Virus record (IMG/VR): IMGVR_UViG_3300034117_001582
Location: 124,001 to 188,000 of that record
Reading direction: 5' to 3' (one strand)
Length of the DNA: 64,000 nt
Shown: positions 41,090-55,411 of the stretch, piece by piece
How the letters are laid out: each line of letters opens with the position of its first letter
Numbering within the stretch: the first letter of the stretch is position 1
Position numbers and translations under genes: made by a program
The notes under the pieces: generated by a model
Database searches by the model: none
The model's input: the letters and a program-made list of their open reading frames with translations, nothing else
Told to the model about the DNA's origin: nothing

Positions 41090-43135
41090 ATGATAGATTC
41101 GGCGGACGGAACAGAAAAACCAAAAAACAAAAACCAAGACGGTTCAGGAAAAACACCAGTTTTAGATAACTTTTCAAGGGATTTAATTAAATTGGCGGAA
41201 GAAGGGAAATTAGATCCGGTTATTGGTCGTGAGGATGAAATAAATAGAATAGCTCAAATACTTTCAAGACGCAAGAAAAATAACCCAATTATTTTAGGTG
41301 AACCTGGTTGTGGTAAAACTGCAATTGTGGAAGGGTTGGCTAAGAAGATTTTTGAAGGTGATTGCCCACAAAATTTAGCAAATAAAAGAATTGTTTCTTT
41401 GGATATGACCTCAATTGTTGCGGGGACAAAATATCGCGGTCAATTTGAGGAAAGAATGAAAGTAATAATTGAAGAATTATACGCAAACCCTGATATCATT
41501 ATTTTCATAGATGAAATCCATACAATGATTGGTGCAGGTAATTCATCAGGATCTATGGATGCGTCAAACATATTCAAACCAGCACTTTCTCGTGGTGAAT
41601 TACAATGTATTGGAGCGACAACATTAGAAGAATATAGAAAGAACATTGAAAAGGACGGAGCATTAGAAAGACGTTTCCAAAAAGTGATTGTGGACCCATC
41701 AACAAAAGAAGAAACATTAATAATATTACAAAACTCAAAAGATAGGTACGAAAAACACCACAAAGTATCCTACAGTGATGATATTTTAAAACTATGTGTT
41801 GAGTTGGCGGATAGATATATTACCGATCGCGAATTCCCTGATAAAGCATTTGATATTATTGATGAGGTTGGTGCTCGTTCGCAGGTGGAAATTAAACTAC
41901 CTGAAATTATTGAGGATTTAAAAAAACAAGCACAACTAATTAAAGAAGAAAAGTTGGATGTGATTAACAAACAAAAATATGAGGAGGCTGCAAATCTTCG
42001 TGACAAAGAAAGAAAAATATTAGCCTATTTGGCAAAAGAAAAAGAAAACTTTGAAAATAATAGAGACCAAAATAAAAGGGTAGTAACCGAAGATGTTGTT
42101 TATGATGTTGTTTCGTTAATGACAAAAATACCAATTAACAAAATTACAAGCGATGAAACACAACAATTAATCACATTAAAAGAAACTTTATCGACTAAAG
42201 TTATTGGTCAAGAGGACGCGGTAGCAAAAATATCAAGATCTATCCAAAGAAATAAAGTAGGATTAAGTGACCCTAAAAAACCAATTTTTAGTGGTTTATT
42301 AATTGGTAATTCAGGTGTTGGTAAAACGGAATTAGCAAAACAATTGGCAAAACATATGTTTAATAGTGAAGATGCACTTATCAGATTAGATATGAGTGAA
42401 TTTTCAGATAAAATTGCGACATCAAAATTAACAGGTACCTCACCAGGTTATGTTGGATATGAAGATGGTTCACCATTCTTAAACAAAATTAAAAATAAAC
42501 CTTATTCAGTTATTCTTTTAGATGAGATTGAAAAGGCTCACCCTGAAATCTTTAACGTATTTTTACAAATGTTAGATGAAGGGTTTTTAACTGATGGTCA
42601 CGGAAGAAAAATCAACTTTAAAAATTGTATTATATTAATGACTTCTAATGTTGGTACTAGAGTCGTACAAGATTTTGGTACTGGCGTTGGTTTTACCACA
42701 AGTACAAAAATTGAAAGACGTGAGGATGAAATAAAATCAGTTTTAGAAAAAGAATTATTTAAAAAGTTTGCACCTGAATTTATAAATAGGTTTGATGACA
42801 TTGTATATTTCAAAGACTTAAACGAAGAAGACTTATTAAAAATTGTTGATTTGGAACTTAACAAATTCTATGAGAGAATTGGTCAATTAGAGTTTCAAGT
42901 TGAGGTTGACGATACTTTGAAAAAACACTTAACTGAAGTTGGTACTGACACTAGATTTGGGTCTCGTATTCTAAAACGTACCGTTCAAAAGTGGGTGGAT
43001 GATGCAATTACGGAAAAGATTTTAACTGATAATCCAGAAAAGGGATCAACTTTTATTCTAACATACAATGAAAAGGATAAAAAGACTGACGTTAAAATAA
43101 AAAAACCAACAAAAAGAAAAACAAAATCACAATAA
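41090..43135 (+). CDS. clpC: ClpC-like AAA+ ATPase lacking N-terminal Clp repeats
   Basis: GEPGCGKT/FIDEIH, UVR-type M domain, GNSGVGKT/LLDEIEKAH, GYVG pore loop, VGF ClpP-docking loop. Confidence 0.88.
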   Translation: MIDSADGTEKPKNKNQDGSGKTPVLDNFSRDLIKLAEEGKLDPVIGREDEINRIAQILSRRKKNNPIILGEPGCGKTAIVEGLAKKIFEGDCPQNLANKRIVSLDMTSIVAGTKYRGQFEERMKVIIEELYANPDIIIFIDEIHTMIGAGNSSGSMDASNIFKPALSRGELQCIGATTLEEYRKNIEKDGALERRFQKVIVDPSTKEETLIILQNSKDRYEKHHKVSYSDDILKLCVELADRYITDREFPDKAFDIIDEVGARSQVEIKLPEIIEDLKKQAQLIKEEKLDVINKQKYEEAANLRDKERKILAYLAKEKENFENNRDQNKRVVTEDVVYDVVSLMTKIPINKITSDETQQLITLKETLSTKVIGQEDAVAKISRSIQRNKVGLSDPKKPIFSGLLIGNSGVGKTELAKQLAKHMFNSEDALIRLDMSEFSDKIATSKLTGTSPGYVGYEDGSPFLNKIKNKPYSVILLDEIEKAHPEIFNVFLQMLDEGFLTDGHGRKINFKNCIILMTSNVGTRVVQDFGTGVGFTTSTKIERREDEIKSVLEKELFKKFAPEFINRFDDIVYFKDLNEEDLLKIVDLELNKFYERIGQLEFQVEVDDTLKKHLTEVGTDTRFGSRILKRTVQKWVDDAITEKILTDNPEKGSTFILTYNEKDKKTDVKIKKPTKRKTKSQ

Positions 43136-43184: not shown

Positions 43185-44219
43185 ATGAATATAGATAAAT
43201 TTAAGGAACTTCTTTCAGTGCCGTCAAAGACATATCAAGAAGAAGATATGGTTGAGCACATCTGCAACGAGTTAGACTCGATTGAGGGTGTTATGTATTA
43301 TCGAGACGAGATGATGAATGTCTACGCAACTAAAGGTGTGTTAGAGGAAGGTGAATACTACCCTATGTTCATTGCACATACAGATACCGTACACACAAAG
43401 ATTGATAAAATTGTTGTTAAAGAAGAAAAACTTAAACGACCAAATACCTTTGGAAAAACTTTTGATGATACCTTAGTTGATGTTTTAAAGGCATATGATG
43501 AAGAAGGGAACCCAACAGGTATTGGTGGTGACGATAAATGTGGGATTTTTATTTGTTTAGAATTACTTAAACAATTAGACAAAGTAAAAGTTGGTTTGTT
43601 TGTGTCTGAAGAAACGGGTTGTCACGGATCATCAAAATGTGATGAGAGTTTTTTAACAGATGTTGGTTATATTACCCAGTATGACGCCCCTGGTAATCAC
43701 CTAATTTCCGAGATTTGCTCGGGAGTTCGTTTGTTTGAAAGAGATAGTGAATTCTTTGAAAAAAGTATTTCAGTAATCGAAGCAGCATTTGGAAATGAAA
43801 TGTTAGTTCAATCACACCCATATACTGATGTATCACAATTAAAGAAAAAGATTGACGTTTCTTGCATCAACATGTCTTGTGGTTACTACAACATGCACAC
43901 AAAAGAAGAATTCATTTCAATTGATGATGTTGAACGTGCAATTGAGGCAGGAAAAAATATGGTTTTTATCTTGGGATTAAATAAACACCAATACGAATAC
44001 AAACCAATTGTTTATACTAATAAAACAATTATGAATTCTTTAGTGGAGGAAGATTTTGATGAGGATATTATCCATCAGTTAGAAACTATCGATGTTGAGG
44101 AAAATAAAGATGGTATCACCATTATTGATCCGTTTGATGGGAATGCTATGTTTATCAATGATGATGATTTGGTTTACTTATATGATATCATTAAAGAAAG
44201 ATTACTTAAAAAATATTAA
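43185..44219 (+). CDS. M20/M28-type zinc peptidase/hydrolase
   Basis: AHTDTVH, GGDDKCG, SEETGC, YD, NMHT..E. Confidence 0.8.
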   Translation: MNIDKFKELLSVPSKTYQEEDMVEHICNELDSIEGVMYYRDEMMNVYATKGVLEEGEYYPMFIAHTDTVHTKIDKIVVKEEKLKRPNTFGKTFDDTLVDVLKAYDEEGNPTGIGGDDKCGIFICLELLKQLDKVKVGLFVSEETGCHGSSKCDESFLTDVGYITQYDAPGNHLISEICSGVRLFERDSEFFEKSISVIEAAFGNEMLVQSHPYTDVSQLKKKIDVSCINMSCGYYNMHTKEEFISIDDVERAIEAGKNMVFILGLNKHQYEYKPIVYTNKTIMNSLVEEDFDEDIIHQLETIDVEENKDGITIIDPFDGNAMFINDDDLVYLYDIIKERLLKKY

Positions 44220-45364
44220 TCCGTTCTATAATCCATTGGGTCAAATAGACTCTCGTTGTATACCATATTTAGAATATCATCAATATACGATTCACCATAT
44301 TTTACGTTGTACGTTTTTGAGTCCCTAAGTGCATATTTGACTTTAAGCGTTTCTTTATCAACGGATTTAATCAATAATGTGACGTTACTATTTGGGACTT
44401 TAACGTATTTATCAAAACCAACCGTTGTGTTAATCTTATCAATTACTGAAAAATACTTTTCTAATGTTCCTTCATTATAGTCCTCAAGTACCCTATCTTT
44501 AAAACTTTCTAAATCGTTATCTACATTGTGGTCAAACGATCCATGAAATGCTTCATCGTCCCAAACATTATATTGTATTTCATAATATTCAGGTAAGTGT
44601 GATATCCGTTCTTTTGATATTGCCAAAAATAATAAATCAAGAAGACTATCACCTTCAGTACCAAAACGTGGATATAACATAATGGCATCTCCCCAATGTA
44701 ATTTATATTTCCAAAAACAATGTCTTTCAGAATAATTTTCAATACCAACAGGAGACAAACAATTACAATATGCGTCTTCAATGTATTTTTCAATACCACC
44801 CTCAACCGCAGCCACTTCAGCATCTACATACGACATTGTTATATCATCAGATATTCTAGTATCTACTTGGTCTAAAAATGAGCCTACCCTATCCACACCG
44901 TCACCACCAAACACCTGTAATTTACCATCCGGGCGCTTATTAAAAGCAGTTAAAAGTCCTGGTTGAACTATTTTTGCAACATCATAAATAATTTGTAAAT
45001 GATCCGATGTTAATGCTTCAACAATAACACCCTCTCTCCAATCATCGTAGGATCTATCATCAAAATCCCAAGTCCAACTTCTTCTATACATAGAATCATA
45101 ATATCCGGCCTCGTAATAAGAATCACTACCTTCTTCACCATACTCTTCAGGAAAAAAGAATCTCAAATATTCTTCTAACCCATCAAACGTAAACATTAAA
45201 CCGTCTTGTTCTACAGTAATAACGTCACTAAAATCATTACCTTCAGAATTAAAAAACTCTACGTCGTAAGGACTGATTTTTTTTTTATTAAGTGCAAGAA
45301 TTTTTTGAAAGTCATTTAACTCTTCTTCTTCCTCTTGTTCAAAAATCCTTAAAATTTTTTTCAT
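44216..45364 (-). CDS. acidic hypothetical protein
   Basis: start MKKILRIFEQ at 45364, next to TATTTATA (45370-45377); the longer ORF would overlap the tmRNA. Confidence 0.7.
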   Translation of the reverse strand: MKKILRIFEQEEEEELNDFQKILALNKKKISPYDVEFFNSEGNDFSDVITVEQDGLMFTFDGLEEYLRFFFPEEYGEEGSDSYYEAGYYDSMYRRSWTWDFDDRSYDDWREGVIVEALTSDHLQIIYDVAKIVQPGLLTAFNKRPDGKLQVFGGDGVDRVGSFLDQVDTRISDDITMSYVDAEVAAVEGGIEKYIEDAYCNCLSPVGIENYSERHCFWKYKLHWGDAIMLYPRFGTEGDSLLDLLFLAISKERISHLPEYYEIQYNVWDDEAFHGSFDHNVDNDLESFKDRVLEDYNEGTLEKYFSVIDKINTTVGFDKYVKVPNSNVTLLIKSVDKETLKVKYALRDSKTYNVKYGESYIDDILNMVYNESLFDPMDYRTD

Positions 45365-45429: not shown

Positions 45430-45849
45430 GGGGGTGTTTTTGGATTTGACAGGTATTGGCTGAAGACAAAGGGCACGTGGGGACTGAATTAATCTCCTTA
45501 AAAACTGATTCATTTTTACAGACGGCAACGTTTTGAACAACCTTGAGACTTTGGGACTTATCTCAACTCAAGAAGTTACTGTAGCTTAATTTAAGCACGG
45601 TAACGGGGGGTCGGTCAGACATATAACCTAGCAACAGAAGTCGTTGACGAGTTGGTTTTCACTCTAAAAGAAAACAGCGGTCTCGTTCAGAGGTCTACCG
45701 TAATAAAAGTGAACTCGACACAGTTATTGGTGACAATGTCAAAATAGGAACCAAATATTTCGGAAGGTATGACAAACCTTGACCTAAACGTGTAGTCCTT
45801 ATCTGACAGGATAGACTGGACCGGAGTTCGAAACTCCGCACCTCCACCA
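45430..45849 (+). ncRNA. ssrA: tmRNA; predicted tag (A)GNVLNNLETLGLISTQEVTVA at 45524-45589
   Basis: GGGGGTG/CACCTCC-ACCA acceptor stem with G3:U, GGATTTGAC D-loop region, T arm CGGAG-TTCGAAA-CTCCG, pk1 at 45479-45512 followed by open tag frame. Confidence 0.93.
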
Positions 45850-45852
45850 TTT

Positions 45853-45880
45853 AAACCTCATCTTAGGATGGGGTTTTTTT
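45853..45880 (+). terminator. terminator after tmRNA
   Basis: AAACCTCATC-TTAG-GATGGGGTTTTTTT. Confidence 0.8.
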
Positions 45881-45931
45881 ATGCACTATAATTATATTTT
45901 AGTGTTGTGTGAATATTATATTTTAGTGCAC

Positions 45932-45965
45932 AAAAAAACCCACCAAAAGGTAGGTTTTGTTTTTT
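45932..45965 (-). terminator. terminator for minus-strand genes
   Basis: AAAAAAACCCACC-AAAA-GGTAGGTTTT. Confidence 0.65.
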
Positions 45966-46812
45966 AAAGATTTCTTGTATTTTTTCGTATCGACTCTTGA
46001 ATCAATTTATCTAATTTGTGATTATTATATTCTTCAATCTTTAATGACTTTAAAACCGCTTCACCACCAGCACCAACAGCCTTTTCAACTGTGCTTGACA
46101 TCATTTTAACAACGGCAGGAGCTAAAAACTTATAAGATGCTGATAAGAATTTTTTAAAGTTTGAACCAACATTATCAAACTTTGATTTTTCATCCGGAGT
46201 CACCTTTGGGCCATAAAGTTTATGACAATATCTAAAAACTTTATTTTCATCTTTAGACATGACCCTTGCAATATCCTTTTGTGCTTTAAGGTCCTTATCT
46301 TTCATTTGGGATTGGTAACCCTTAAGTCTTACCTCAAAACTTTTCCATATTTCACCACAATTTTGTTTAATTTTTTCTGTTAGGCCTTCAGGTGTCGGTG
46401 TGGTGGTTGTAGTTCCGGTCGGAGGTGTCGCACCAGTCGGAGTTGTAGTTCCGGTTGGTGGTGTAGTTCCGGTTGGTGGTGTAGTTCCTGTTGGTGTTGG
46501 TGTAGTTCCTGTTGGTGTTGGTGTGGTTCCTGTTGGTGTTGGTTGACCTTCTGCCGTTGCAGGAGCTGCAGTCGATTTGGTAAATAATTTATTTATTGCT
46601 TCTATACCCTTTGGATTTGTTTGTGTTTTCCAATTATTGGTACCTTTAGTTGCGTACTCAACTTTATCTCCGGTTTTTCTATATTGGTAAGAGTCTCCAT
46701 TACCACCTTGTACAACTTCTTGCTCTACTAAATACAACCTTTTAGTTGCATTTTCATGCAAATTAATAATTCTATTTTTTTCCTCTTGGGATAATTCAAA
46801 TAAATTTTTCAT
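45964..46812 (-). CDS. putative head-internal protein with PTGTT linker
   Basis: leader ELSQEEKNRIINLHE...LVEQ; Pro/Thr/Gly repeats at ~46390-46545. Confidence 0.6.
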   Translation of the reverse strand: MKNLFELSQEEKNRIINLHENATKRLYLVEQEVVQGGNGDSYQYRKTGDKVEYATKGTNNWKTQTNPKGIEAINKLFTKSTAAPATAEGQPTPTGTTPTPTGTTPTPTGTTPPTGTTPPTGTTTPTGATPPTGTTTTTPTPEGLTEKIKQNCGEIWKSFEVRLKGYQSQMKDKDLKAQKDIARVMSKDENKVFRYCHKLYGPKVTPDEKSKFDNVGSNFKKFLSASYKFLAPAVVKMMSSTVEKAVGAGGEAVLKSLKIEEYNNHKLDKLIQESIRKNTRNL

Positions 46813-46819
46813 GCGTTTT

Positions 46820-47974
46820 TTAATAATAAATACTTTTATATTTTAATTTTTTCTTTGTTGTGTAAAAATAGTTTTCATTTGTTGTTTGCCCTGTGGTCGT
46901 AACTTGTGTTTCAGTTTGCCCTGTGGTCGTAACTTGTGTTTCAGATTGACTAATTGCCTCAAGTTCTGTTTGTGCTTGTTGAATCGCATCTTTACCTTTT
47001 GACATATCTGCTTTTAATTTTTTCTTTGCCCAAGAATCCCCTTGAGAAATTAATTTGTTAACGTTTGCAAATTTTTCAATCGCTTTTGGTAAAAACTTTT
47101 TTACGATATCGTATATTTTTGGCATTTTTTTAATTGATTCTACTGCCTGTGAAATTCCAGACGACATAATGTTTTTAAGCGGTTGTAAAAATTTCGTAAG
47201 ATAACCATTAGATAATAACGCAAAAATATCAATCAATAACAACATCCAACTACCCTTTCCACTTATGGCCATATAAGCATCATATATGGTTAAAGCTCCC
47301 CACGCTACCGTAGTGGCAATTGCTCCTATACCTGTAAAACTTAAAAATTTTTGTACAAGGGCACCCATAGGACTATTTAATGCGTTTCTTAAACCTGCAA
47401 AAAACTTATCAAACCCCGTTTTTTTTATTTTTTCGGCAACTTGGTCATCAGATAAAGTTTGTTGTGTTACTGACTGTCCACCATTAAATGGTATTTTTTT
47501 TTCAATCTCTTTAGATAGTTCACCTTCAGCACCGTACCATTGTTCAGTATTTTTTAATCTCCACGCATATTTTTTTTCTCCACTTTCAAAATATAATTTA
47601 AAGTCGTATTGTGGATTTGTTTTTATATCAATTTGTTCTGTTTTTTGGGTTTCTGATTGTTCTAAAATAAAATTTTTAAAATTTTTAAATTGTGAGTCGG
47701 TAAATATTTTGATATTTTCTTCATTTTCTAAAATGAGGTTATTTAAGTTTTTTTTACTATACTCCAAAATCTTTTTCTTTGGGTATCCAATAGATTTTAA
47801 ATTATCCTCTATTAGTTTTTGAACGTATTTTTTTTGTTCGTATTTACCTTTTATAAAACAACCAAAAGTTGCATCACAAATTCTTTTTTGAAATTCTAAC
47901 GACTCATTTATTGATGAAGTATTTAATTTTTTTGATAACTCTTTTAATTGGTTGTCCGTTAAAATAATTTTCAT
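46820..47974 (-). CDS. putative head-internal/ejection protein with hydrophobic hairpin
   Basis: leader IILTDNQLKE..INES; hydrophobic stretch TGIGAIATTVAWGAL...MLLLIDIFALL; exact 30-bp duplication at 46884-46943. Confidence 0.6.
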   Translation of the reverse strand: MKIILTDNQLKELSKKLNTSSINESLEFQKRICDATFGCFIKGKYEQKKYVQKLIEDNLKSIGYPKKKILEYSKKNLNNLILENEENIKIFTDSQFKNFKNFILEQSETQKTEQIDIKTNPQYDFKLYFESGEKKYAWRLKNTEQWYGAEGELSKEIEKKIPFNGGQSVTQQTLSDDQVAEKIKKTGFDKFFAGLRNALNSPMGALVQKFLSFTGIGAIATTVAWGALTIYDAYMAISGKGSWMLLLIDIFALLSNGYLTKFLQPLKNIMSSGISQAVESIKKMPKIYDIVKKFLPKAIEKFANVNKLISQGDSWAKKKLKADMSKGKDAIQQAQTELEAISQSETQVTTTGQTETQVTTTGQTTNENYFYTTKKKLKYKSIYY

Positions 47975-48002
47975 TAATTTTTTTTTTATTTATATAAATA
48001 TC

Positions 48003-48186
48003 CGTATATTTGTAATTATACAAACATTCCTTCCATATTCAGATTTTAGAAAATCTTGATAACAAACGATTAGGTAAAAAACTTGTTGATGATTATAAGA
48101 TATTTTGGAAGGTATGACAAGCCTTGACCTAAACGTGTAGTCCTTATCTGACAGGCTGGACAGGATCGGAGTTCAAATCTCCACCA
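48003..48186 (+). pseudogene. chimeric remnant: 5' end of the glycosylase gene fused to the 3' end of tmRNA
   Basis: 48003-48100 resembles 48582-48690 (ATG changed to ATA, ~11-nt deletion); 48100-48186 resembles 45755-45849 with 34 nt identical. Confidence 0.9.
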
Positions 48187-48194
48187 TTTAAAAA

Positions 48195-48225
48195 CAAAAA
48201 CCCCTCTTTTGGAGGGGTTTGTTTT
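48195..48225. terminator. intrinsic terminator, likely bidirectional
   Basis: AAAACCCCTC-TTTTG-GAGGGGTTT. Confidence 0.75.
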
Positions 48226-48514: not shown

Positions 48515-48583
48515 AATTTTTTTTTAATTTTTTTTATTTATTATCTTTCCATATAAATATATCGTACTTTAAAAAAAGATTCG

Positions 48584-48591
48584 TATATTTG
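48584..48591 (+). promoter_or_regulatory. Bacteroidota sigmaA -7 element
   Basis: TATATTTG 5 nt before ATG; second copy at 48005-48012. Confidence 0.6.
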
Positions 48592-48596
48592 TAATT

Positions 48597-49103
48597 ATGC
48601 AAACATTTCTTCCATACTCAGATTTTAGAAAATCTTTAGAATCTCTTGATAACAAACGATTAGGTAAACAACGCGTTGAGGCTTATCAGATAATTTCAGC
48701 AATTACGGGTCGACCAAAAAAGAACGGACAACCTTATAAAGGGTGGATATCTCACCCATGTTCGGTAATGTGGAAAGACTATGTGAATGCGCTTAAACTA
48801 TACTACAACGATTGTATTGATGTGTGGGTGTCTCGTGGTTTTAAAAACACAATGCAACATGAACACATTGAAGGTGAGTTTGTTTTACCTCATTGGTTGG
48901 GTGATGAAGAGTTTCATTCATCACATAGATCTAATCTATTACGTAAGGATTTTGATTATTATACAAAACACGGGTGGTTAGATAACCCTGACGACCCATA
49001 CGTGTGGATGGATAATCAAGGATTGTGGTACAAACAAATTGCTGGTACTAAAGAAAGGATTTATTATAAACCAAATATTATATTAGAATCCGTTGGTTGT
49101 TGA
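48597..49103 (+). CDS. pyrimidine-dimer DNA glycosylase/EndoV-like (MSMEG_6728 family)
   Basis: MQTFLPY..F..S...LD.KRLGKQRVE..QI, HP...MW, SHRSNLLRKD. Confidence 0.85.
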   Translation: MQTFLPYSDFRKSLESLDNKRLGKQRVEAYQIISAITGRPKKNGQPYKGWISHPCSVMWKDYVNALKLYYNDCIDVWVSRGFKNTMQHEHIEGEFVLPHWLGDEEFHSSHRSNLLRKDFDYYTKHGWLDNPDDPYVWMDNQGLWYKQIAGTKERIYYKPNIILESVGC

Positions 49104-49928
49104 ATTATAGAAAACCAATCCTGTTACGTTAGTTGTTTTTGAGATAGTTGGGGTTGAGTAATTAAATGTCATTACATCACCTCCACCCTGTTCTCCAAAT
49201 TGTATTCTGATTGGATAATAAGTCTCCGCGGTTAATGATGCAGTTCCTGACCGTTCTTGATTTGCGTGTAAACCCCCATTTTTTACTGTCGCATTTAAAG
49301 TAGTAAACCCTGTTATCGCAATATCACCGATCCACATATATGAAGCATCATCCGATGACGTAAAGAATGCGTAGGTTTCCGTTGTTGTTGGTTTGAAATA
49401 ACCTAACCATTGACAACTAAAATTAGATCCATCATCTTGGGCTGGTTCAAATATAGAAGTGGTTTGTACTGATGTTGCCGGATTTCCACCTACCGATGCC
49501 GGAGTTGCAGTTGCAAAGAAACTAACGTTATCGGCAAAATATCCAGAGTAGGTTGTTTTAAATACACCAGCAGTATAAGGTAAAACCCAAGAAGTCCAAT
49601 ACCCATTTGTAGTTAAATACGATGAACACTGAGTAGTTCCGGTAAATGTTTGATTAAATACAGAATTAACTAAATTAATAAATGATTGGTCTGTTTTTAA
49701 TTTTGACCTTGAAAATCTAATATAAGCTGGCACATTGTCAGGGTTAGGTTGATTTCCACTAGTGTTTGGTCTACAAATAACATATCCTAAATCTTCATCG
49801 GGACCATTCCACCATCTAGGGTTTCCAGTAAATCCTGATGATGGCGTACCAACGGCCAATGAACCAATTTGTGTTGTTCCTGATATCGTTGAACCTGTGT
49901 TATATGCGAAAGGTCTTGCAGTTGCCAT
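49083..49928 (-). CDS. PA14-domain virion protein
   Basis: FSCQWLGYF.P....Y.F...SDDAS..WI, NGGLH, YPIRIQFGE.GG. Confidence 0.8.
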   Translation of the reverse strand: MATARPFAYNTGSTISGTTQIGSLAVGTPSSGFTGNPRWWNGPDEDLGYVICRPNTSGNQPNPDNVPAYIRFSRSKLKTDQSFINLVNSVFNQTFTGTTQCSSYLTTNGYWTSWVLPYTAGVFKTTYSGYFADNVSFFATATPASVGGNPATSVQTTSIFEPAQDDGSNFSCQWLGYFKPTTTETYAFFTSSDDASYMWIGDIAITGFTTLNATVKNGGLHANQERSGTASLTAETYYPIRIQFGEQGGGDVMTFNYSTPTISKTTNVTGLVFYNSTTNGF

Positions 49929-49957: not shown

Positions 49958-50884
49958 CTAAACTATTTCCAATACCTTATTATAAACGGCAAAGATTGTT
50001 GGGTGACACTCAAATGTTTCTTTTCTTTCTAAACAATTAACAAGTGAAGGTATACCTTGTATTGATTGCCATTCTCTAACTCCGTATTTAATATCTGAAG
50101 CACAATGTAAACCACAACCACCAAGAACATAATGGTATTTATAACCTTGATTATTTTTTCTATATGGTGCTCTAAATTGAGGGTGTATTGAACTTCCAAG
50201 TTGAATAATTTCTGAGTCTGTTGTTCCTGCTAAATGAAGTAATCCTGAATCCATAGTAATGAAACACATTGCACCATTAATTAACCACCATGTTTGAGAT
50301 AAGGTTGTTTGGTTCATTAAATTCAAACCAATATCAATATTAAAATTAAAAACGGGTTTATCCACATTTGAACCACCAAGTTCTGATGAATCTTTTCCAA
50401 CAGAAATAACGGCAATACCTCTTTCATTTAATAGTTTTGTTAACATTTGCCATTTTTTTGCATCCCAAGTTCTTGAATTCCAATTTTGAACAGGGTGAAT
50501 TAAAACATATTTTTCAGGTAATCCTTCAATTGATTCTACCTCATCAGGAAAATAGTCCATTGACATTTCATCTTTGGTCAACATAAAACCTAAATTAACC
50601 GCATGAAATTGTCTAATATCCATTGCATTATGTTTATAACAAACACCGTTTGGGTGATACCCAATATTAAAGGATTGAAATACTTCATAATCATTTTTAA
50701 TGTCGTCTGTAATTTCATTAAAAATATTATCTACATAAGGATTGTTTTTAAAAATTTCTGGTTGGTTTGTTGCTACTGATATTTTTTTACCGTAAGAATT
50801 ATAAAGTTTTCTTAAAGTGGGTGTTACCGCTAAGGTATCACCTAACGCTCTACATCCTAACACATCAACACAAACATCTTTCAT
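49958..50884 (-). CDS. GT9 (heptosyltransferase-like) glycosyltransferase with C-terminal Cys cluster
   Basis: LGDTL..TP, MDSGLLHLAG, CGLHC...C...FEC. Confidence 0.85.
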   Translation of the reverse strand: MKDVCVDVLGCRALGDTLAVTPTLRKLYNSYGKKISVATNQPEIFKNNPYVDNIFNEITDDIKNDYEVFQSFNIGYHPNGVCYKHNAMDIRQFHAVNLGFMLTKDEMSMDYFPDEVESIEGLPEKYVLIHPVQNWNSRTWDAKKWQMLTKLLNERGIAVISVGKDSSELGGSNVDKPVFNFNIDIGLNLMNQTTLSQTWWLINGAMCFITMDSGLLHLAGTTDSEIIQLGSSIHPQFRAPYRKNNQGYKYHYVLGGCGLHCASDIKYGVREWQSIQGIPSLVNCLERKETFECHPTIFAVYNKVLEIV

Positions 50885-50935
50885 TCTATAATAATATGAA
50901 CTTCACAAATAAACTAAATGTTTTATTTTTATGTT

Positions 50936-53900
50936 ATGGAAAAAACTAAAATAGTCCTCATAAGTTCGTATTGTGATACCGAAGAAAAAATTGACGTTCT
51001 AATAAATACCATCAAAACCATTAAGAGTTACAATTTAGATGTAATGGTAAATAGTCCTTTACCTTTACCTTCAGATGTAATAAATATGTGTGATTTTTAT
51101 GTGCAAACAAAAGAAAACCCATTACTTAATTGGCCCGAAAAATCTGTTATGTCTTGGGCAAGATACATTGGAAAGGATAGGGAAATTGTAGTTAAAAGAT
51201 CGGTAATTGATTATGGGTGGGCAGCACTTTACCAAACTAAAAAATTATCTGAATATGCGTTAACATATGACTATGACAGATATTATCATATTATATATGA
51301 TACGGAAATTGATGATACGGTGGTTTCTACTTTTTTATCGGATAAAAAATGTAACTTTTTTCCATTTCACGAACACAAAGTTAGTTTACATTTAATTGCG
51401 TTAGATAGAGAAAACCTATTGAAATTTTCAAATCTAATAACTTTTGATAGTTACCTTAAATTTAATTGTATTGTTGAGAACTGGCTTTACAACACTCTAA
51501 TTAATAGTGATATGAATTATAAAATTGAATTAGAAAAAATTGATGATTTAATATTATTCCATAAAGACGAAAATTTATTTGACTACTCCGACATTAATGG
51601 TTTAGTTTTTTTCATAGTTAAAGATGTTGTAAATAATGATGAGGTTTGTTTATATTTTTACAATAATAAAGAAAAAATAAATGTTTTAATTACCGTAGAT
51701 GGTGTCGAGTCCTCTTATGATATATCCAATAGGGATATCATTAATTTAGGGTTTAAACCATACAATATAAAAAATGTTTTAATATCTTATGATGGAATAT
51801 CATCGGATATAACAGAAAAAATAAAAAATATTATCCACAATGTTATTGAAATTATTATGAATAAATCAAAAATTAAACTATTATATCTTACACCACACCT
51901 ATCAACAGGTGGAATGCCTCAATTTGTATTAAAAAGAATTCAAGAACTCCAAAAATACAAAGACCAAATTGAAATATTTTTGGTTGAGTATTCTCAGTTT
52001 AGTAACACATACGTTGTCCAACGAGATAAAATAATTAATCTATTAGGTGAAGGTCATTTTTTTAGTTTAGGTGATACAACCGATACAAAAAGAAAATATG
52101 AGCTAATTGATATTATTAAAAACAATAATATTGATATTGTTCATTCAGAAGAAATGTTAGAAGGATTTGAAAGTTTTAATAAAATTCCACTACCATTGTT
52201 AAATCAACTTTATTCAAATGATAGGACTTGGAAAATGGTTGAGACTTGTCATAATGTTTGGTTTAACCCACAAACACATAAAAAGTTCAATCCTGAAGCG
52301 TATTGTTTTGTTACCCCTTATCATTTAAAGGAAACGTTTTTAAATGAAACACCAATTAAGTTTTTATCTCTATACCCAATTGAGAATAAGGTAACTAAAA
52401 TTTTAGAGGAGAATGAAATCTATGGTGATTTTAATCAAGTACCACTTATTGAAAAAATTAAAGTAAGAAATGAACTTGGTTTGGATATGTTTAAAACTCA
52501 CGTACTTAATGTTGGGTTATGGACAAGTGGTAAAAATCAAGGTGAAGGTGTTGAGGTTGCAAGAGAATTAATTGACTCAAACCCAGATATTGAATTCCAT
52601 TTTATTGGGAACCAAGCTCCAAACTTTGAGGACTATTGGGGTCCAATAATGAATAATTTACCATCAAACGTAAAAGTATGGGGTGAGCGTAATGACGTTG
52701 AAAAATTCATGGCGGCTTGTGATGTTTTAATGTTTAACTCAACTTGGGAATGTAATCCGTTGGTTGTTAGAGAATCAATCAACTATGGAATGAAAATACT
52801 TGCAAGAGATTTACCACAATACATGGGTATGTTTGATGGATATATAACACCAATAGAAGGTGATGTTAAAAACATATCAAAACAATTGGTTGGACTTATC
52901 AAAAATAAGGACGTTTATAAAATATTACCTGATGATACATTTGGTGAAGATTTATTAAATTTTTATAACGCAGTTACAAATATAAAAATTACCCAAAACA
53001 AACCATTAACCAAAGATTATACTTTTGTTAGACATTATGTTAATCAACCTTATTTTGAGGTACAAGGAACCACAGAAAACAAATTGAACATTAAATATTA
53101 TGATGATAACAATAATGTTAATTATCAGAACGAATTATCAATTAATAGTTGGGTTAAATTAAATAAAGAATACTTTATTAAATGGAGAACAACGGTTGAA
53201 GAAAATGGTGAAATTATTTACGATGAGACTTTAAATTTAAAAGATAAACGAGTATATATTTCTTTTGGATCAAAATCATTAGGAGATACAATGGCTTGGA
53301 TTCCTTATTGTGAGGTATTTAGAAAAAAACATGGTTGTCAACTTATAGTATCAACATTCCTTAATAGTTTGTTTAAAGACCAATATCCTGAGATTGAATT
53401 TGTTGAACCTGGTGATTTGGTAACTAATATACACGCACAATATAGATTAGGTTGGCATTATACAAGTGAAGGGGTTTACGATAATAACAAACACCCATTT
53501 GATTTTAAGAAAATGCCATTACAAAAAACGGCAACTGACATCTTAGGTTTAGATTATGAAGAAGTTAGACCACTATTAAAATTACCTAACACACCTAAAA
53601 AGAAAAAAGTTGGTATTGGGTTTCACTCAACCGCACAATCAAAATATTGGAACAACCCTGACGGATGGCAAGCAGTTGTTGACCACCTTAATACTTTAGG
53701 TTATGAATGTATGATCTACTCTAAAGAAGGTGACGGATACATGAATAACCATTACCCTAAAGGTGTAACCATTTTTAAAGGAGGTAACTTACAAGAAGTA
53801 ATTGACGACCTATCAGAATGTGAGTTCTTTATTGGTCTCGGATCAGGATTATCTTGGTTAGCTTGGGCTTGTAAATTACCTGTCGTTTTGATTTCAGGAT

Positions 53901-55411
53901 TTAGTGAAAAATGGGCGGAAACAACATTAGACACATATAGAGTTATTAATGAAAGTGTTTGTCACGGATGTTTTAACTCAGATAGATTAGATGCCGGTGA
54001 TTGGAATTGGTGTCCACTACATAAGAACACAGATCGGATGTTTGAATGTACAAAAGAAATAAGTTCCGGTATGGTTATTAAAGAAATAAATAAAATAATT
54101 AACAAAGAATCTAATAGTGATTTAGTTACTATTATATTGTCCCACGCAAACACAAAAGAAAAAAGAAAAATTTTAATAGAACATTTAAAAACAATTAATA
54201 CAAAAATACTACTATCAACAAATTACCCAATTGATGATGAAATTAAAGTTTTATGTGATTACGTCATATATGATGAGGATAACCCAATATTATTGAAGGA
54301 GGATTTTAATAAGTATAACGTGTCTTTTTATTTTTATAGTGTCAGAAAAGGGGTTGAGGTAAGGGAATCCTTTGATTATGAACACGGGTACGCTGTTTAT
54401 AAATTAATACAAAACGGATTAACTGAATCAAAAAAATTAGGATTTAAATATTCTCATATTATAAATTACGATTATTTAATAAACAAAAACACATTACAAG
54501 ATAACTATAAATTATTAGAAAATTACGATTCCGTATTTTATAGATATAAAAATAAATCATATACGCAAGACTCATACTGTACTGGATTTTTTACAGGAAA
54601 AATAGATAAGTTAATTAAACCATTTACCCACTATAACACAAAAGACGAATATTATAATTATGACGGGTATAATAAAATATTAGAAATAATAACAAAAGAT
54701 GCGGTAAAAAAACAAAACTTAAAAGTTAAAGAACTTTTTTATGAAGACTTAAAGGAAACATCAATTGTTAATAGAGTAGACGATAACCACAAAAATAACA
54801 AAGAAGTAATGGAAGAAAACGAATTCAAAAAAATAAGTGATTATTATAATTGCGATAAAACATCCACACACACATACCATAACGTCTATTCAAAAATATT
54901 TGAAGGGATAAGAGATGAGGTATTTTCGTTATTAGAAATCGGAATTCATGAGGGAGCATCTTTAAATGTTTGGAGAGACTATTTGAAGAATGCTAATATA
55001 TATGGTTTAGATATCAATAGGGAATTTTCACATGATAGGGGTCATATTTTTAAAGGAGACCAAAATAACTTATTTGATTTAGAAAAAATCACATCAGAAA
55101 TAAAAAGTTGTAAAGTCATAATTGATGATGCTTCCCATAATCCACAACATCAAATTAAAACCTTTAATTATCTTTTTGAGAATTTATTAGAAGATGGTGG
55201 GTACTATATTATTGAAGACGTTGAAACGTCGTATTGGGATCCATTATCTGAATTATATGGGTATGAAATTGGTTATTTAAATGTTGTTGATTATTTTAGT
55301 AAATTAACACATAATGTTAATTACAAATACAATGGATTTAATAATACTTTAAAAATTGAAAGCATTTTATTTACATCAAATTGTATTGTGATAAAAAAAT
55401 TAATGAAATAA
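50936..55411 (+). CDS. multidomain glycosyltransferase: GT-A-like, GT4, TibC/Aah-type O-heptosyltransferase, GT-A-like, methyltransferase
   Basis: PHLSTGGMPQ / ECNPLVVRES (GT4); SLGDTMAW.PY, GLGSGLSWLAWA, ISGFS, YRVIN..CHGC..C..FEC (TibC); LLEIGI, IIDDASH, GGYYIIEDV (MTase). Confidence 0.85.
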   Translation: MEKTKIVLISSYCDTEEKIDVLINTIKTIKSYNLDVMVNSPLPLPSDVINMCDFYVQTKENPLLNWPEKSVMSWARYIGKDREIVVKRSVIDYGWAALYQTKKLSEYALTYDYDRYYHIIYDTEIDDTVVSTFLSDKKCNFFPFHEHKVSLHLIALDRENLLKFSNLITFDSYLKFNCIVENWLYNTLINSDMNYKIELEKIDDLILFHKDENLFDYSDINGLVFFIVKDVVNNDEVCLYFYNNKEKINVLITVDGVESSYDISNRDIINLGFKPYNIKNVLISYDGISSDITEKIKNIIHNVIEIIMNKSKIKLLYLTPHLSTGGMPQFVLKRIQELQKYKDQIEIFLVEYSQFSNTYVVQRDKIINLLGEGHFFSLGDTTDTKRKYELIDIIKNNNIDIVHSEEMLEGFESFNKIPLPLLNQLYSNDRTWKMVETCHNVWFNPQTHKKFNPEAYCFVTPYHLKETFLNETPIKFLSLYPIENKVTKILEENEIYGDFNQVPLIEKIKVRNELGLDMFKTHVLNVGLWTSGKNQGEGVEVARELIDSNPDIEFHFIGNQAPNFEDYWGPIMNNLPSNVKVWGERNDVEKFMAACDVLMFNSTWECNPLVVRESINYGMKILARDLPQYMGMFDGYITPIEGDVKNISKQLVGLIKNKDVYKILPDDTFGEDLLNFYNAVTNIKITQNKPLTKDYTFVRHYVNQPYFEVQGTTENKLNIKYYDDNNNVNYQNELSINSWVKLNKEYFIKWRTTVEENGEIIYDETLNLKDKRVYISFGSKSLGDTMAWIPYCEVFRKKHGCQLIVSTFLNSLFKDQYPEIEFVEPGDLVTNIHAQYRLGWHYTSEGVYDNNKHPFDFKKMPLQKTATDILGLDYEEVRPLLKLPNTPKKKKVGIGFHSTAQSKYWNNPDGWQAVVDHLNTLGYECMIYSKEGDGYMNNHYPKGVTIFKGGNLQEVIDDLSECEFFIGLGSGLSWLAWACKLPVVLISGFSEKWAETTLDTYRVINESVCHGCFNSDRLDAGDWNWCPLHKNTDRMFECTKEISSGMVIKEINKIINKESNSDLVTIILSHANTKEKRKILIEHLKTINTKILLSTNYPIDDEIKVLCDYVIYDEDNPILLKEDFNKYNVSFYFYSVRKGVEVRESFDYEHGYAVYKLIQNGLTESKKLGFKYSHIINYDYLINKNTLQDNYKLLENYDSVFYRYKNKSYTQDSYCTGFFTGKIDKLIKPFTHYNTKDEYYNYDGYNKILEIITKDAVKKQNLKVKELFYEDLKETSIVNRVDDNHKNNKEVMEENEFKKISDYYNCDKTSTHTYHNVYSKIFEGIRDEVFSLLEIGIHEGASLNVWRDYLKNANIYGLDINREFSHDRGHIFKGDQNNLFDLEKITSEIKSCKVIIDDASHNPQHQIKTFNYLFENLLEDGGYYIIEDVETSYWDPLSELYGYEIGYLNVVDYFSKLTHNVNYKYNGFNNTLKIESILFTSNCIVIKKLMK

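What the first reader, a model, noticed from the sequence alone, without database searches (positions are those of the whole stretch)
45524..45589. tmRNA tag of 21 residues ending TVA
Seen: a resume codon GGC 12 nt after pk1 gives GNVLNNLETLGLISTQEVTVA*. Known: typical tags are about 10 residues ending in (Y/F)ALAA, and Bacteroidota tags start with G. The extra amphipathic segment VLNNLETLGLI could be an adaptor or unfoldase docking site.
Basis: partly seen in the sequence, partly recalled or inferred. Interest (0 to 1): 0.6.

Follow-up and report, generated by a model that had tools for sequence, protein, structure and literature searches.

The report
Phage tmRNA with conserved long tag
A 292-kb phage carries its own ribosome-rescue RNA (tmRNA) whose 21-residue tag ending in TVA is real, conserved across more than 100 related phage sequences and absent from cellular genomes, and it always lies beside a phage ClpC-type unfoldase and a peptidase, which suggests but does not prove a phage-owned tagging and degradation module.

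Summary
Window 45430-45849 (+) is a complete one-piece tmRNA (Rfam RF00023, 95 bits). It lies in a 291,867-bp phage genome that has no SmpB, ClpP, AlaRS, RNase R or Lon. The GGC at 45524 is the resume codon. It lies 11 nt after pk1, has the frame-setting A at -4, and its frame ends at a UAA at the tip of helix 5. Among 109 distinct related phage tmRNAs this frame always gives a 21-22-residue peptide (40 variants, consensus G[ND]V[LF]x[NK][LM]xxxGL[ILV]xxxxxxVA). Its variability pattern is that of a coding region, and the other frames are not conserved. The corrected tag pattern hits at least 120 viral contigs and none of 185,579 species-representative bacterial and archaeal genomes. ARAGORN misses or mis-calls most members. 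The "amphipathic" label is not supported. New context: all 45 tag-found loci with enough flank have, 1-5 kb upstream, a ClpC-type double-ring unfoldase with no N-domain but an intact ClpP-docking (V/I)GF loop, plus an M20/M42 exopeptidase. The most likely reading is a phage-specific degron. That the phage ClpC-like protein reads it is an inference from linkage only. Long tags and phage tmRNAs are both known, so this is a new variant of a known kind.

The parts
45430..45849 (+). One-piece tmRNA gene, including the encoded CCA end
   Evidence: Rfam RF00023, 95 bits, model positions 1-374. Homologues found in 155 related viral loci, 109 distinct sequences.
45430..45436 (+). Acceptor stem 5' strand GGGGGUG. 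It pairs with CACCUCC at 45839-45845 and includes G3.U70, the alanine identity pair.
   Evidence: G1-C, G2-C and G3.U are invariant in 91 of 91 distinct sequences. Pairs 4-7 show several compensatory pair types.
45479..45512 (+). Pseudoknot pk1: stem 1 is GGGGA 45479-83 with UCUCC 45493-97; stem 2 is UGAAUUA 45485-91 with UGAUUCA 45506-12
   Evidence: Rfam alignment. Each pair is formed in 57 to 73 of the sequences that have both bases (66-73 per pair), with some compensatory changes.
45513..45523 (+). Single-stranded spacer with the frame-setting nucleotides: A at -4 (45520), C at -5, C at -1
   Evidence: The spacer is 10-11 nt in 73 of 73 sequences. Position -4 is A in 73 of 73, and -5 and -1 are always C or U. 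In E. coli A86 (-4) is the main frame determinant, and U85C is tolerated but U85A is not (PMC2481249).
45524..45589 (+). Tag reading frame: GGC resume codon, 21 codons (GNVLNNLETLGLISTQEVTVA), UAA stop at 45587-89
   Evidence: There are 40 peptide variants, all 21-22 residues. Synonymous switches include Arg14 AGA/CGT and Leu12 TTA/CTT/CTA/CTC/TTG.
45575..45604 (+). Helix 5 hairpin, formed by the last tag codons and the sequence after the stop, with UAA at its tip
   Evidence: Rfam alignment. Folding each sequence alone gives this hairpin in 83 of 84 distinct sequences, with compensatory variants such as GCUUA/UAAGC and GCCUA/UAGGC.
45822..45838 (+). T-arm of the tRNA-like domain (CGGAG UUCGAAA CUCCG)
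   Evidence: Covarying pairs.
45853..45883 (+). Intrinsic terminator of the tmRNA gene
   Evidence: 10-bp stem followed by a T-run.
41090..43135 (+). ClpC-type double-ring AAA+ unfoldase, 681 aa, with no N-terminal adaptor domain. It has an M-domain coil, both pore loops and a GVGF ClpP-docking loop.
   Evidence: PHROG 4871 and Pfam AAA/AAA_2/ClpB_D2-small. Best solved match is S. aureus ClpC 6em9, E = 3e-201, residues 9-680 against 145-816, with GVGF aligned to FAGF. Motifs are invariant in 88 homologues. Present upstream of the tmRNA in 45 of 45 tag-found loci.
43185..44219 (+). Di-metal exopeptidase of the M20/M42 (PepT/TET) type, 344 aa
   Evidence: Pfam M42 and M20, PHROG 4191. Invariant H65xD67, D116/D117, E142-E143, D167, H238. 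Model pLDDT 80; Foldseek matches PepT and TET aminopeptidases at E = 1e-9 to 1e-6. Present in 45 of 45 loci.
44216..45364 (-). Conserved 382-aa protein of unknown fold between the peptidase and the tmRNA. Optional part of the cluster; membership in the module is unproven.
   Evidence: Present in 97 of 157 loci. No family hit. Model pLDDT 88 without any fold match.
48100..48192 (+). Decayed duplicate of the tmRNA 3' end, which brackets a 2.3-kb insert
   Evidence: 90% identical to 45755-45837, plus the exact repeat CTCCACCATTTAAA. It lacks 8 nt of the acceptor strand and has its own terminator at 48198-48220.

Best explanation
This is a working phage-encoded tmRNA. Inferred from established tmRNA biology: host AlaRS charges it, host SmpB and EF-Tu deliver it to stalled ribosomes, and translation resumes at GGC 45524. 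The stalled polypeptide then receives Ala plus GNVLNNLETLGLISTQEVTVA, and the ribosome terminates at the UAA at the tip of helix 5. Shown here: the RNA architecture, the reading frame, and selection on the peptide. The tag is a C-terminal signal specific to this phage lineage, and by analogy with all studied tmRNA tags it is most likely a degron. My preferred reader, which is an inference from gene linkage only, is the phage's own ClpC-type unfoldase encoded 2.3 kb upstream. This protein lacks the adaptor-binding N-domain and so would have to engage the tag directly. It keeps the (V/I)GF loop needed to dock on host ClpP. The adjacent M20/M42 exopeptidase would then trim the released peptides to amino acids. 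The net effect would be to free ribosomes and recycle truncated proteins during infection. My confidence is about 0.95 that this is a tmRNA with this 21-residue frame, about 0.7 that the tag is a degron, and about 0.3 that the phage ClpC-like protein is its reader.
For: tmRNA identity: Rfam 95 bits over the full model; G1-C, G2-C and G3.U invariant in 91 of 91, with compensatory changes in acceptor pairs 4-7, helix 2 and the T-arm; pk1 and helix 5 supported; its own terminator. Frame: resume codon 10-11 nt after pk1, and A at -4 in 73 of 73, matching the E. coli rules (PMC2481249); the stop lies at the tip of helix 5 in 83 of 84. Selection on the peptide: 109 distinct RNAs give 40 peptides, all 21-22 residues, with G1, V3, G11, L12, V20 and A21 invariant, codon-position entropy 3 > 1 > 2, and multi-base synonymous switches; other frames are not conserved; the tag region is as conserved as the tRNA-like domain and more so than pk2-4. 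Phage-specific: at least 120 viral contigs against 0 of 185,579 species genomes. Dependence on the host: no SmpB, ClpP, AlaRS, RNase R or Lon in a genome CheckV rates 99% complete. Link to the protease genes: 45 of 45 tag-found loci with at least 5 kb upstream carry the ClpC-like gene (49-92% identity) and the peptidase; the trio stays adjacent although the peptidase gene is inverted in one clade and the 382-aa ORF is optional. The unfoldase looks active and able to dock ClpP: both Walker A/B pairs and both pore loops are essentially invariant and (V/I)GF is conserved in 88 homologues, and none has an N-domain. Precedent for a tag co-evolving with a different protease: Mycoplasma and Lon.
Against: The link to the ClpC-like protein rests on synteny within one phage clade, where shared ancestry alone keeps many genes adjacent. 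The three genes are not one operon: an opposite-strand ORF lies between them here, and the peptidase is inverted in another clade. Related huge phages carry a ClpC-like gene without any tmRNA (LR756502, LR745206) or with a distant tmRNA and an unrelated tag (LR756508), so the unfoldase does not need this tag. The phage has no ClpP, so any proteolysis depends on a host ClpP of unknown compatibility. The host is not identified. A hydrophobic C-terminal ...VA could equally be read by host ClpXP, Lon or FtsH.
Confidence: 0.55

Rival explanations
1. The tag is a degron for host proteases (ClpXP, Lon or FtsH), and the neighbouring ClpC-like and peptidase genes are unrelated passengers. The phage simply supplies extra tmRNA to keep ribosomes free, and its tag drifted to a form that the host machinery still accepts.
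For: The phage has no ClpP, Lon or SmpB, so it depends on host machinery anyway. The C-terminus is small and hydrophobic (...VA), and the tag starts with G like the Bacteroides tag GETNYALAA. Other huge phages have a ClpC-like gene without a linked tmRNA. Phage tmRNAs have been proposed to maintain the hijacked translation machinery (PMC9004378).
Against: Drift does not explain strict conservation of a 21-residue peptide with invariant G1, V3, G11, L12, V20 and A21 across 40 variants. The tag lacks the terminal di-alanine that ClpX reads. No cellular genome among 185,579 species carries this tag, so no host is known to have machinery tuned to it. Complete linkage to an unfoldase gene, 45 of 45.
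Confidence: 0.3
2. The tag is not a degradation signal. It might shield rescued polypeptides from host proteolysis, route them elsewhere, or occupy or inhibit a host adaptor or protease.
For: The tag has no ALAA end. The conserved internal motif GL[ILV], 8-10 residues from the C-terminus, is not needed for a simple C-terminal degron.
Against: Every tmRNA tag tested so far is a degron, including the long Mycoplasma one. The genes next to it are an unfoldase and a peptidase. No phage protein carries a similar motif that would point to a binding partner.
Confidence: 0.1
3. Translation resumes elsewhere and the real tag is short: ATF* in the +1 frame, or an internal start as in ARAGORN's ATEQVTVA call.
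For: ARAGORN proposes ATEQVTVA or ATEEVTVA for some relatives. GCA, the commonest resume codon, overlaps GGC in the +1 frame.
Against: The +1 frame gives ATF*, AMC* or ATYLITFQWLV* in different relatives, so it is not conserved. The internal codon is TCA in this window and Arg, Ser, Ala or Lys elsewhere. It lies about 50 nt from pk1, whereas the resume codon is expected about 12 nt away. Codons 1-13 show peptide-level selection. A at -4 is invariant relative to GGC.
Confidence: 0.02
4. The gene is an inactive relic, kept only as an attachment site for mobile DNA or as a decoy for SmpB through its tRNA-like domain, and the tag is irrelevant.
For: The 3' end is duplicated around a 2.3-kb insert. 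TLD-only tmRNA-like genes exist in phages (DS6A, PMC4131195; LR756508). One relative has a deleted mini form.
Against: Compensatory changes maintain every helix, and the tag frame is intact in 109 of 109 distinct full-length sequences. A relic or a TLD decoy would not conserve the peptide.
Confidence: 0.03

Closest known systems
Canonical bacterial tmRNA (SsrA): E. coli ANDENYALAA, Bacteroides GETNYALAA
   Same: One-piece architecture with the G3.U70 acceptor stem, T-arm, pk1, A at -4, resume codon 10-12 nt after pk1, stop in helix 5, and an encoded CCA. The Gly first codon matches Bacteroides.
   Different: The tag is twice as long, has no Y/F-ALAA end and no terminal di-alanine, and carries a conserved internal GL[ILV] motif. 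It is encoded by a phage that has no SmpB. This tag family is absent from 185,579 cellular species genomes.
Mycoplasma/Mesoplasma ssrA tag with Lon
   Same: A long (27-residue) non-canonical tag that co-evolved with a protease other than ClpXP (PMC8403727). This is the best functional analogy for a tag and protease pair that diverged together.
   Different: That pair is cellular and Lon-based, and its tag is rich in aromatic residues. Here the candidate reader is a phage ClpC-type unfoldase, the tag has no aromatic residues in most variants, and the pairing is untested.
Previously reported phage tmRNAs: mycobacteriophage Bxz1 group, Bacillus phage G, Melnitz-like two-piece tmRNAs, huge-phage tmRNAs
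   Same: tmRNA genes carried by large phages. The roles proposed for them are upkeep of translation or tagging for amino-acid recycling (PMC4131195, PMC9004378, PMC7162821).
   Different: Those surveys relied on ARAGORN, which finds only 25 of the 205 fetched loci of this family (155 with a complete tmRNA) and calls their tags inconsistently. I found no report of a conserved phage-specific tag or of linkage to a phage unfoldase. No DNA match in the 50,697-record phage collection.
ClpC (S. aureus 6em8/6em9, B. subtilis ClpC/MecB)
   Same: A single continuous alignment over D1, the M-domain region and D2, E = 3e-201. Both Walker A/B pairs, the pore loops, and the ClpP-docking tripeptide at the same position.
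   Different: It lacks the roughly 144-residue N-domain that binds adaptors such as MecA and McsB (adaptor roles from my own knowledge). It is encoded by a phage, with no ClpP partner in the same genome.

Membership tests
tmRNA (Rfam RF00023, one-piece) | Covariance-model score above the gathering threshold over the full model | tested here: met
   95 bits against 47, model positions 1-374.
tmRNA (Rfam RF00023, one-piece) | tRNA-like domain: 7-bp acceptor stem with G3.U70, T-arm, discriminator A plus CCA | tested here: met
   G3.U in 91 of 91; compensatory changes in pairs 4-7 and in the T-arm; the window encodes ACCA.
tmRNA (Rfam RF00023, one-piece) | pk1 followed by a single-stranded spacer with A at -4 and a resume codon about 12 nt downstream | tested here: met
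   Spacer 10-11 nt and A at -4 in 73 of 73. The rule comes from PMC2481249.
tmRNA (Rfam RF00023, one-piece) | Short ORF with no start codon, ending at a stop in or near the loop of helix 5, conserved as a peptide | tested here: met
   The hairpin spans the stop in 83 of 84; codon-position signature and 40 variants of 21-22 residues.
tmRNA (Rfam RF00023, one-piece) | Pseudoknots pk2-pk4 between helix 5 and the 3' strand of helix 2 | tested here: inconclusive
   The region has the right length, but the Rfam alignment there has low posterior probability, it is the most variable part, and I did not test its pairings.
tmRNA (Rfam RF00023, one-piece) | Alanylation, SmpB binding and tagging activity | not testable with these tools
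   No SmpB or AlaRS in the phage.
Canonical ssrA degron (ClpX-type, ...ALAA) | C-terminal di-alanine preceded by a hydrophobic residue | tested here: not met
   All variants but one end in [TVAS]VA and one ends in VAY. The di-alanine rule is from PMC9601184.
ClpC-type class I AAA+ unfoldase | Two AAA+ modules with Walker A/B motifs and pore loops | tested here: met
   GEPGxGKT, FIDEIH, KYRGQFE, GxxGVGKT, LxDEIEK and GYVG are invariant or nearly so in 89 sequences.
ClpC-type class I AAA+ unfoldase | ClpP-docking (V/I/A)GF loop in D2 | tested here: met
   GVGF aligns with FAGF of S. aureus ClpC; [VIML]GF is present in all 89 sequences (V in 81). That this tripeptide docks ClpP is from my own knowledge.
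ClpC-type class I AAA+ unfoldase | N-terminal repeat domain (adaptor and phospho-arginine binding) | tested here: not met
   The alignment starts at ClpC residue 145. Stop-to-stop frames are at most about 730 codons in 116 loci. I therefore call it ClpC-like and do not file it as a full member.
M20/M42 (clan MH) di-metal exopeptidase | MH-clan fold with the His-x-Asp, Asp, Glu-Glu, Asp/Glu and His ligand set | tested here: met
   Foldseek matches PepT 3gb0 at E = 1.4e-9 and TET aminopeptidases at about 1e-8. Invariant H65xD67, D116/117, E142-E143, D167, H238. Assigning these residues as ligands is by pattern and was not checked by superposition.

The most novel reading that the evidence does not exclude
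A widespread clade of large environmental phages, probably infecting Bacteroidota, carries a self-contained, orthogonal tagging and degradation module. Its own tmRNA writes a 21-residue degron that no cellular genome encodes. An N-domain-less ClpC-type unfoldase reads that degron directly and feeds host ClpP. An M20/M42 exopeptidase finishes the job. Together these would let the phage decide the fate of every rescued polypeptide independently of the host's SsrA, ClpX and SspB system.
Probability: 0.3. Interest if true: 0.8.

Novelty: new variant of a known kind. Interest (0 to 1): 0.6.

Why it matters
Phage tmRNAs have so far been treated as annotation items, and why a virus should carry one is an open question. 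This family provides a clear handle on it. The tag peptide is itself under selection, which means the phage cares about the fate of rescued proteins and not only about freeing ribosomes. The tag is phage-specific. It also travels with an unfoldase and a peptidase. If the pairing holds, it would be the first viral degron and unfoldase pair. It would also be a ready-made orthogonal degradation tag for synthetic biology, comparable to the Mesoplasma ssrA and Lon pair. The practical lesson holds either way: ARAGORN-based surveys miss or mis-call these genes, so phage tmRNAs and unusual tags are under-counted.

Tried and rejected
1. ARAGORN on the window and on a cut-out found nothing. Across the 205 fetched loci (155 with a complete tmRNA) it called a tmRNA in 25, with inconsistent tags. 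I rejected its calls as a guide to the frame.
2. Searches used a mistyped 67-letter pattern with one N too many, so they are void. The error was found and the scans were repeated correctly. This used both genome-contig scans, so I could not fetch bacterial loci or handles to compare host tmRNAs directly.
3. The tmRNA has no DNA match in the 50,697-record phage collection.
6. RNAalifold on the whole-length alignment and on the short pk1 and helix 5 alignments gave little or nothing. I replaced it with pair counts on the named stems and with single-sequence folds.
7. Amphipathic-helix test of the tag: negative.
8. Search for phage proteins that end like the tag or contain its motif: none, and only 2 of 562 ORFs end in VA, about the number expected by chance.
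9. The 382-aa ORF next to the tmRNA was tested as a possible adaptor. It has no family, no atlas hit and no fold match, so it remains unexplained.
10. Complex prediction was not run. The tag (21 residues) is below the tool's 30-residue guidance, and a hexameric unfoldase exceeds its size limit.
11. The large protein searches were not used.
12. Host assignment is circumstantial only: 1 of 266 genes has a Shine-Dalgarno-like motif, and TAnnTTTG occurs 27 times against 18.2 +/- 4.3 expected, clustered 11-40 nt upstream of starts.

Full report
WHAT IS THERE. The window is part of a single 291,867-bp virus record with 31.8% G+C, rated 99% complete by CheckV. It carries eight tRNA genes elsewhere. 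Rfam's tmRNA model matches window 45430-45849 on the + strand over its whole length at 95 bits, against a gathering score of 47. This is the only true tmRNA in the genome. The sequence starts GGGGGUG and ends CACCUCCACCA, which gives a 7-bp acceptor stem with the G3.U70 alanine identity pair and an encoded CCA. An intrinsic terminator follows at 45853-45876. ARAGORN reports nothing here.

THE TAG AND ITS FRAME. The Rfam alignment places the consensus resume codon on GGC 45524-45526. It also shows a 27-nt insertion inside the tag template relative to the consensus. Four independent lines support this frame.

(i) Position. pk1 (45479-45512) ends 11 nt before GGC, and the spacer is 10-11 nt in 73 of 73 distinct relatives. 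In E. coli the distance is 12 nt (PMC2481249).

(ii) Frame-setting nucleotides. The base at -4 is A in 73 of 73, and -5 and -1 are always pyrimidines. In E. coli, A86 at -4 is the main frame determinant and is almost universal, and U85 tolerates C but not A.

(iii) The stop codon. UAA lies at the tip of helix 5 (45575-45604), and the same hairpin forms over the stop in 83 of 84 distinct sequences. Compensatory variants include GCUUA/UAAGC and GCCUA/UAGGC.

(iv) Selection on the peptide, described next.

RELATIVES. The neighbouring ATPase gene has 513 relatives in viral contigs. Nearly every fetched locus with enough flank has a tmRNA homologue downstream. This set was not selected through the tag. 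It gave 35 distinct tmRNAs and 9 tag peptides, all 21-22 residues, whereas frames +1 and +2 give ATF*, AMC*, ATYLITFQWLV* and similar unconserved strings. An earlier mistyped pattern makes void.

In total there are 109 distinct tmRNAs and 40 tag peptides. The consensus is G[ND]V[LF]x[NK][LM]xxxGL[ILV]xxxxxxVA. G1, V3, G11, L12, V20 and A21 are invariant. Several of these positions were fixed by the search pattern, but they are also invariant in the unselected set.

Column entropy by codon position is 0.55, 0.17 and 0.71 bits in the unselected set and 0.80, 0.43 and 1.13 in the full set. Synonymous switches need two or three base changes at some codons, for example Arg14 AGA/CGT and Leu12 TTA/CTT/CTA/CTC/TTG. 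The tag template (0.69-0.70 bits per column) is as conserved as the tRNA-like domain and pk1. It is clearly more conserved than the spacer (1.21), the 3' strand of helix 5 (1.18) and pk2-pk4 (1.05).

THE RNA IS MAINTAINED AS A tmRNA. In 91 distinct sequences G1-C, G2-C and G3.U never change. Acceptor pairs 4-7, helix 2 and the T-arm show many compensatory pair types, for example GGGGGUG/CACCUCC, GGGCCUA/UAGGUCC and GGGUCCG/CGGAUCC. The pk2-pk4 region aligned poorly, and I did not test its pairings.

WHY ARAGORN FAILS, AND THE SHORT-TAG RIVAL. Over the 205 fetched loci, 155 of which yielded a complete tmRNA, ARAGORN called a tmRNA in 25. Among the 20 calls I printed, it gave the full 21-mer in 2 loci, ATEQVTVA or ATEEVTVA from an internal GCA (codon 14) in 14, and far-downstream frames in 4. 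The internal start is not credible. Codon 14 is TCA in this window and Arg, Ser, Ala or Lys elsewhere. It lies about 50 nt from pk1. The thirteen codons before it are under peptide-level selection. Surveys that rely on ARAGORN, such as PMC7162821 and PMC9004378, would under-count or mis-read this family.

WHAT THE PHAGE BRINGS AND WHAT IT BORROWS. The genome has no SmpB, ClpP, AlaRS, RNase R or Lon. Charging, delivery to the ribosome and any ClpP-based proteolysis must therefore use host proteins. This is an inference from established tmRNA biology.

The phage does encode two relevant proteins, 2.3 kb upstream on the same strand. The first is a 681-aa double-ring AAA+ protein (41090-43135). 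Its best solved relatives are S. aureus and B. subtilis ClpC, at E = 3e-201 in a single stretch, residues 9-680 against 145-816. It has no N-domain. Stop-to-stop frames in 116 loci never exceed about 730 codons. It keeps the M-domain region, both Walker A/B pairs and both pore loops (KYRGQFE and GYVG). A GVGF aligns with the FAGF loop of S. aureus ClpC, and (V/I)GF is conserved in 88 homologues. That this loop docks ClpP comes from my own knowledge of Clp ATPases.

The second protein is a 344-aa peptidase (43185-44219). It has weak Pfam M42 and M20 hits and invariant H65xD67, D116/117, E142-E143, D167 and H238. Its model (pLDDT 80) matches PepT and the tetrahedral TET aminopeptidases.

LINKAGE. 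Among loci found through the tag pattern, and so independently of the ATPase, 45 of the 45 with at least 5 kb upstream of the tmRNA have the ClpC-like gene on the same strand 1-5 kb upstream, at 49-92% identity, together with the peptidase. The trio stays adjacent through rearrangements. In a diverged clade the peptidase gene is inverted, the 382-aa ORF between peptidase and tmRNA is present in only 97 of 157 loci, and insertions stretch the distance.

There are caveats. All of these phages are one clade, so shared ancestry may be enough to explain the linkage. The closest database phages with a ClpC-like gene (55% identity) are huge uncultured phages. Two of them have no tmRNA. A third has a tmRNA 360 kb away, with an unrelated tag of about 36 residues by my reading.

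MECHANISM. Shown: a maintained tmRNA, its frame, a peptide under selection, phage specificity, and linkage to an apparently active unfoldase able to dock ClpP and to an exopeptidase. Inferred: the tag is a degron, as are all tested tags, including the 27-residue Mycoplasma tag read by Lon (PMC8403727). It lacks the terminal di-alanine that ClpX recognises (PMC9601184), so it is likely to be read by something other than a canonical ClpX site. The adaptor-less ClpC-like protein is the obvious candidate, and the peptidase would complete the recycling to amino acids. An amino-acid recycling role for phage tmRNAs has been suggested before without evidence (PMC9004378). I put about 0.3 on the ClpC pairing and about 0.3 on host proteases alone.

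THE 'AMPHIPATHIC' CLAIM. The helical hydrophobic moment of residues 1-14 does not exceed that of shuffled versions for four representative tags (P = 0.41-0.88). No phage ORF carries the tag motif, and C-terminal VA is not enriched.

HOST. The host is unknown. Circumstantial signs point to Bacteroidota. The first tag residue is Gly, as in Bacteroides GETNYALAA. Shine-Dalgarno-like motifs are almost absent, with 1 of 266 genes having one. There is a modest excess of TAnnTTTG clustered close upstream of starts. That these last two features are typical of Bacteroidota is from my own knowledge.

COMPARISON AND NOVELTY. Phage tmRNAs are known: mycobacteriophages and Bacillus phage G (PMC4131195), about 2.3% of isolate phages (PMC9004378), and huge phages (PMC7162821). 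Long tags are also known, for example in Mycoplasma. As far as my searches reach, three things are new: a conserved, phage-specific tag family, its invisibility to the standard detection tool, and its constant association with an N-domain-less ClpC-type unfoldase and an exopeptidase. I rate it a new variant of a known kind, with interest 0.6.

LIMITS. Viral contigs may be redundant across samples, so I counted distinct sequences only. The absence from cellular genomes applies to 21-codon tags that fit my pattern, in one genome per species.

Noticed in passing
window 45755-45855 and 48100-48192 (insert 45850-48099): The last ~95 nt of the tmRNA gene are repeated 2.34 kb downstream (90% identity, plus the exact repeat CTCCACCATTTAAA). 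The downstream copy has lost 8 nt of the acceptor strand and keeps its own terminator (48198-48220). The pair brackets two minus-strand ORFs, 45964-46812 and 46820-47974, which occur in only 4-5 of 157 related loci. This looks like the attL/attR arrangement of islands that integrate into tmRNA 3' ends (compare PMC12595487), but inside a phage genome and with no recognisable integrase. L013 has a similar remnant 546 nt downstream of its tmRNA.
   Followed up: partly
L061:12307-12519: A natural mini-tmRNA of about 213 nt. It keeps the tRNA-like domain, pk1 and a truncated tag (GNVLDNLSVVGLN*), then joins directly to the 3' strand of helix 2. Helix 5 and pk2-pk4 are deleted.
   Followed up: partly
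L068:6001-8496 (also L069-L071, L075, L080, L120): In some relatives the ClpC-like gene carries a ~0.5-kb insertion exactly in the D1 Walker A loop (GEPG^CVLGDTW...VVSHN^CGKT), with intein-type junction residues. In L068 the frame stops about 24 residues into the insert and restarts at a Met, which suggests a naturally split intein with a very short N-fragment.
   Followed up: partly
LR756508.1 92434-92880 (L209) and 414804-414915 (L212): A 484-kb uncultured huge phage has a tmRNA (72 bits) whose tag I read as about 36 residues, starting with G and ending PAAV. It also has a separate 112-nt gene that matches only the tRNA-like domain of tmRNA (58 bits), like the TLD-only gene of mycobacteriophage DS6A. 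Long non-canonical tags may be common in huge phages.
   Followed up: partly
window 44219-45364 (-): A 382-aa acidic protein between the peptidase and the tmRNA is conserved in 97 of 157 loci. It gives a confident model (pLDDT 88) but has no Pfam, PHROG, NCBIfam, atlas or PDB fold match (best VIA Z 6.0, on generic helical bundles).
   Followed up: yes
window 46390-46560 (-, inside ORF 45964-46812): Eight or more tandem copies of an 18-21-nt unit form a repetitive low-complexity linker in one of the insert's ORFs.
   Followed up: no
whole genome (G000): Only 1 of 266 predicted genes has a Shine-Dalgarno-like motif within 20 nt of its start. TAnnTTTG occurs 27 times in upstream windows against 18.2 +/- 4.3 expected, mostly 11-40 nt before the start. 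A repeated intergenic element holding TATATTTG lies at 47989-48019 and 48568-48598. These are hints of a Bacteroidota host.
   Followed up: partly
window 49083-49928 (-), 49958-50884 (-), 50918-55411 (+): Downstream neighbours are a PA14/GLEYA-domain protein, a family-9 glycosyltransferase (heptosyltransferase-like), and a 1497-aa protein with a C-terminal methyltransferase-like region.
   Followed up: no
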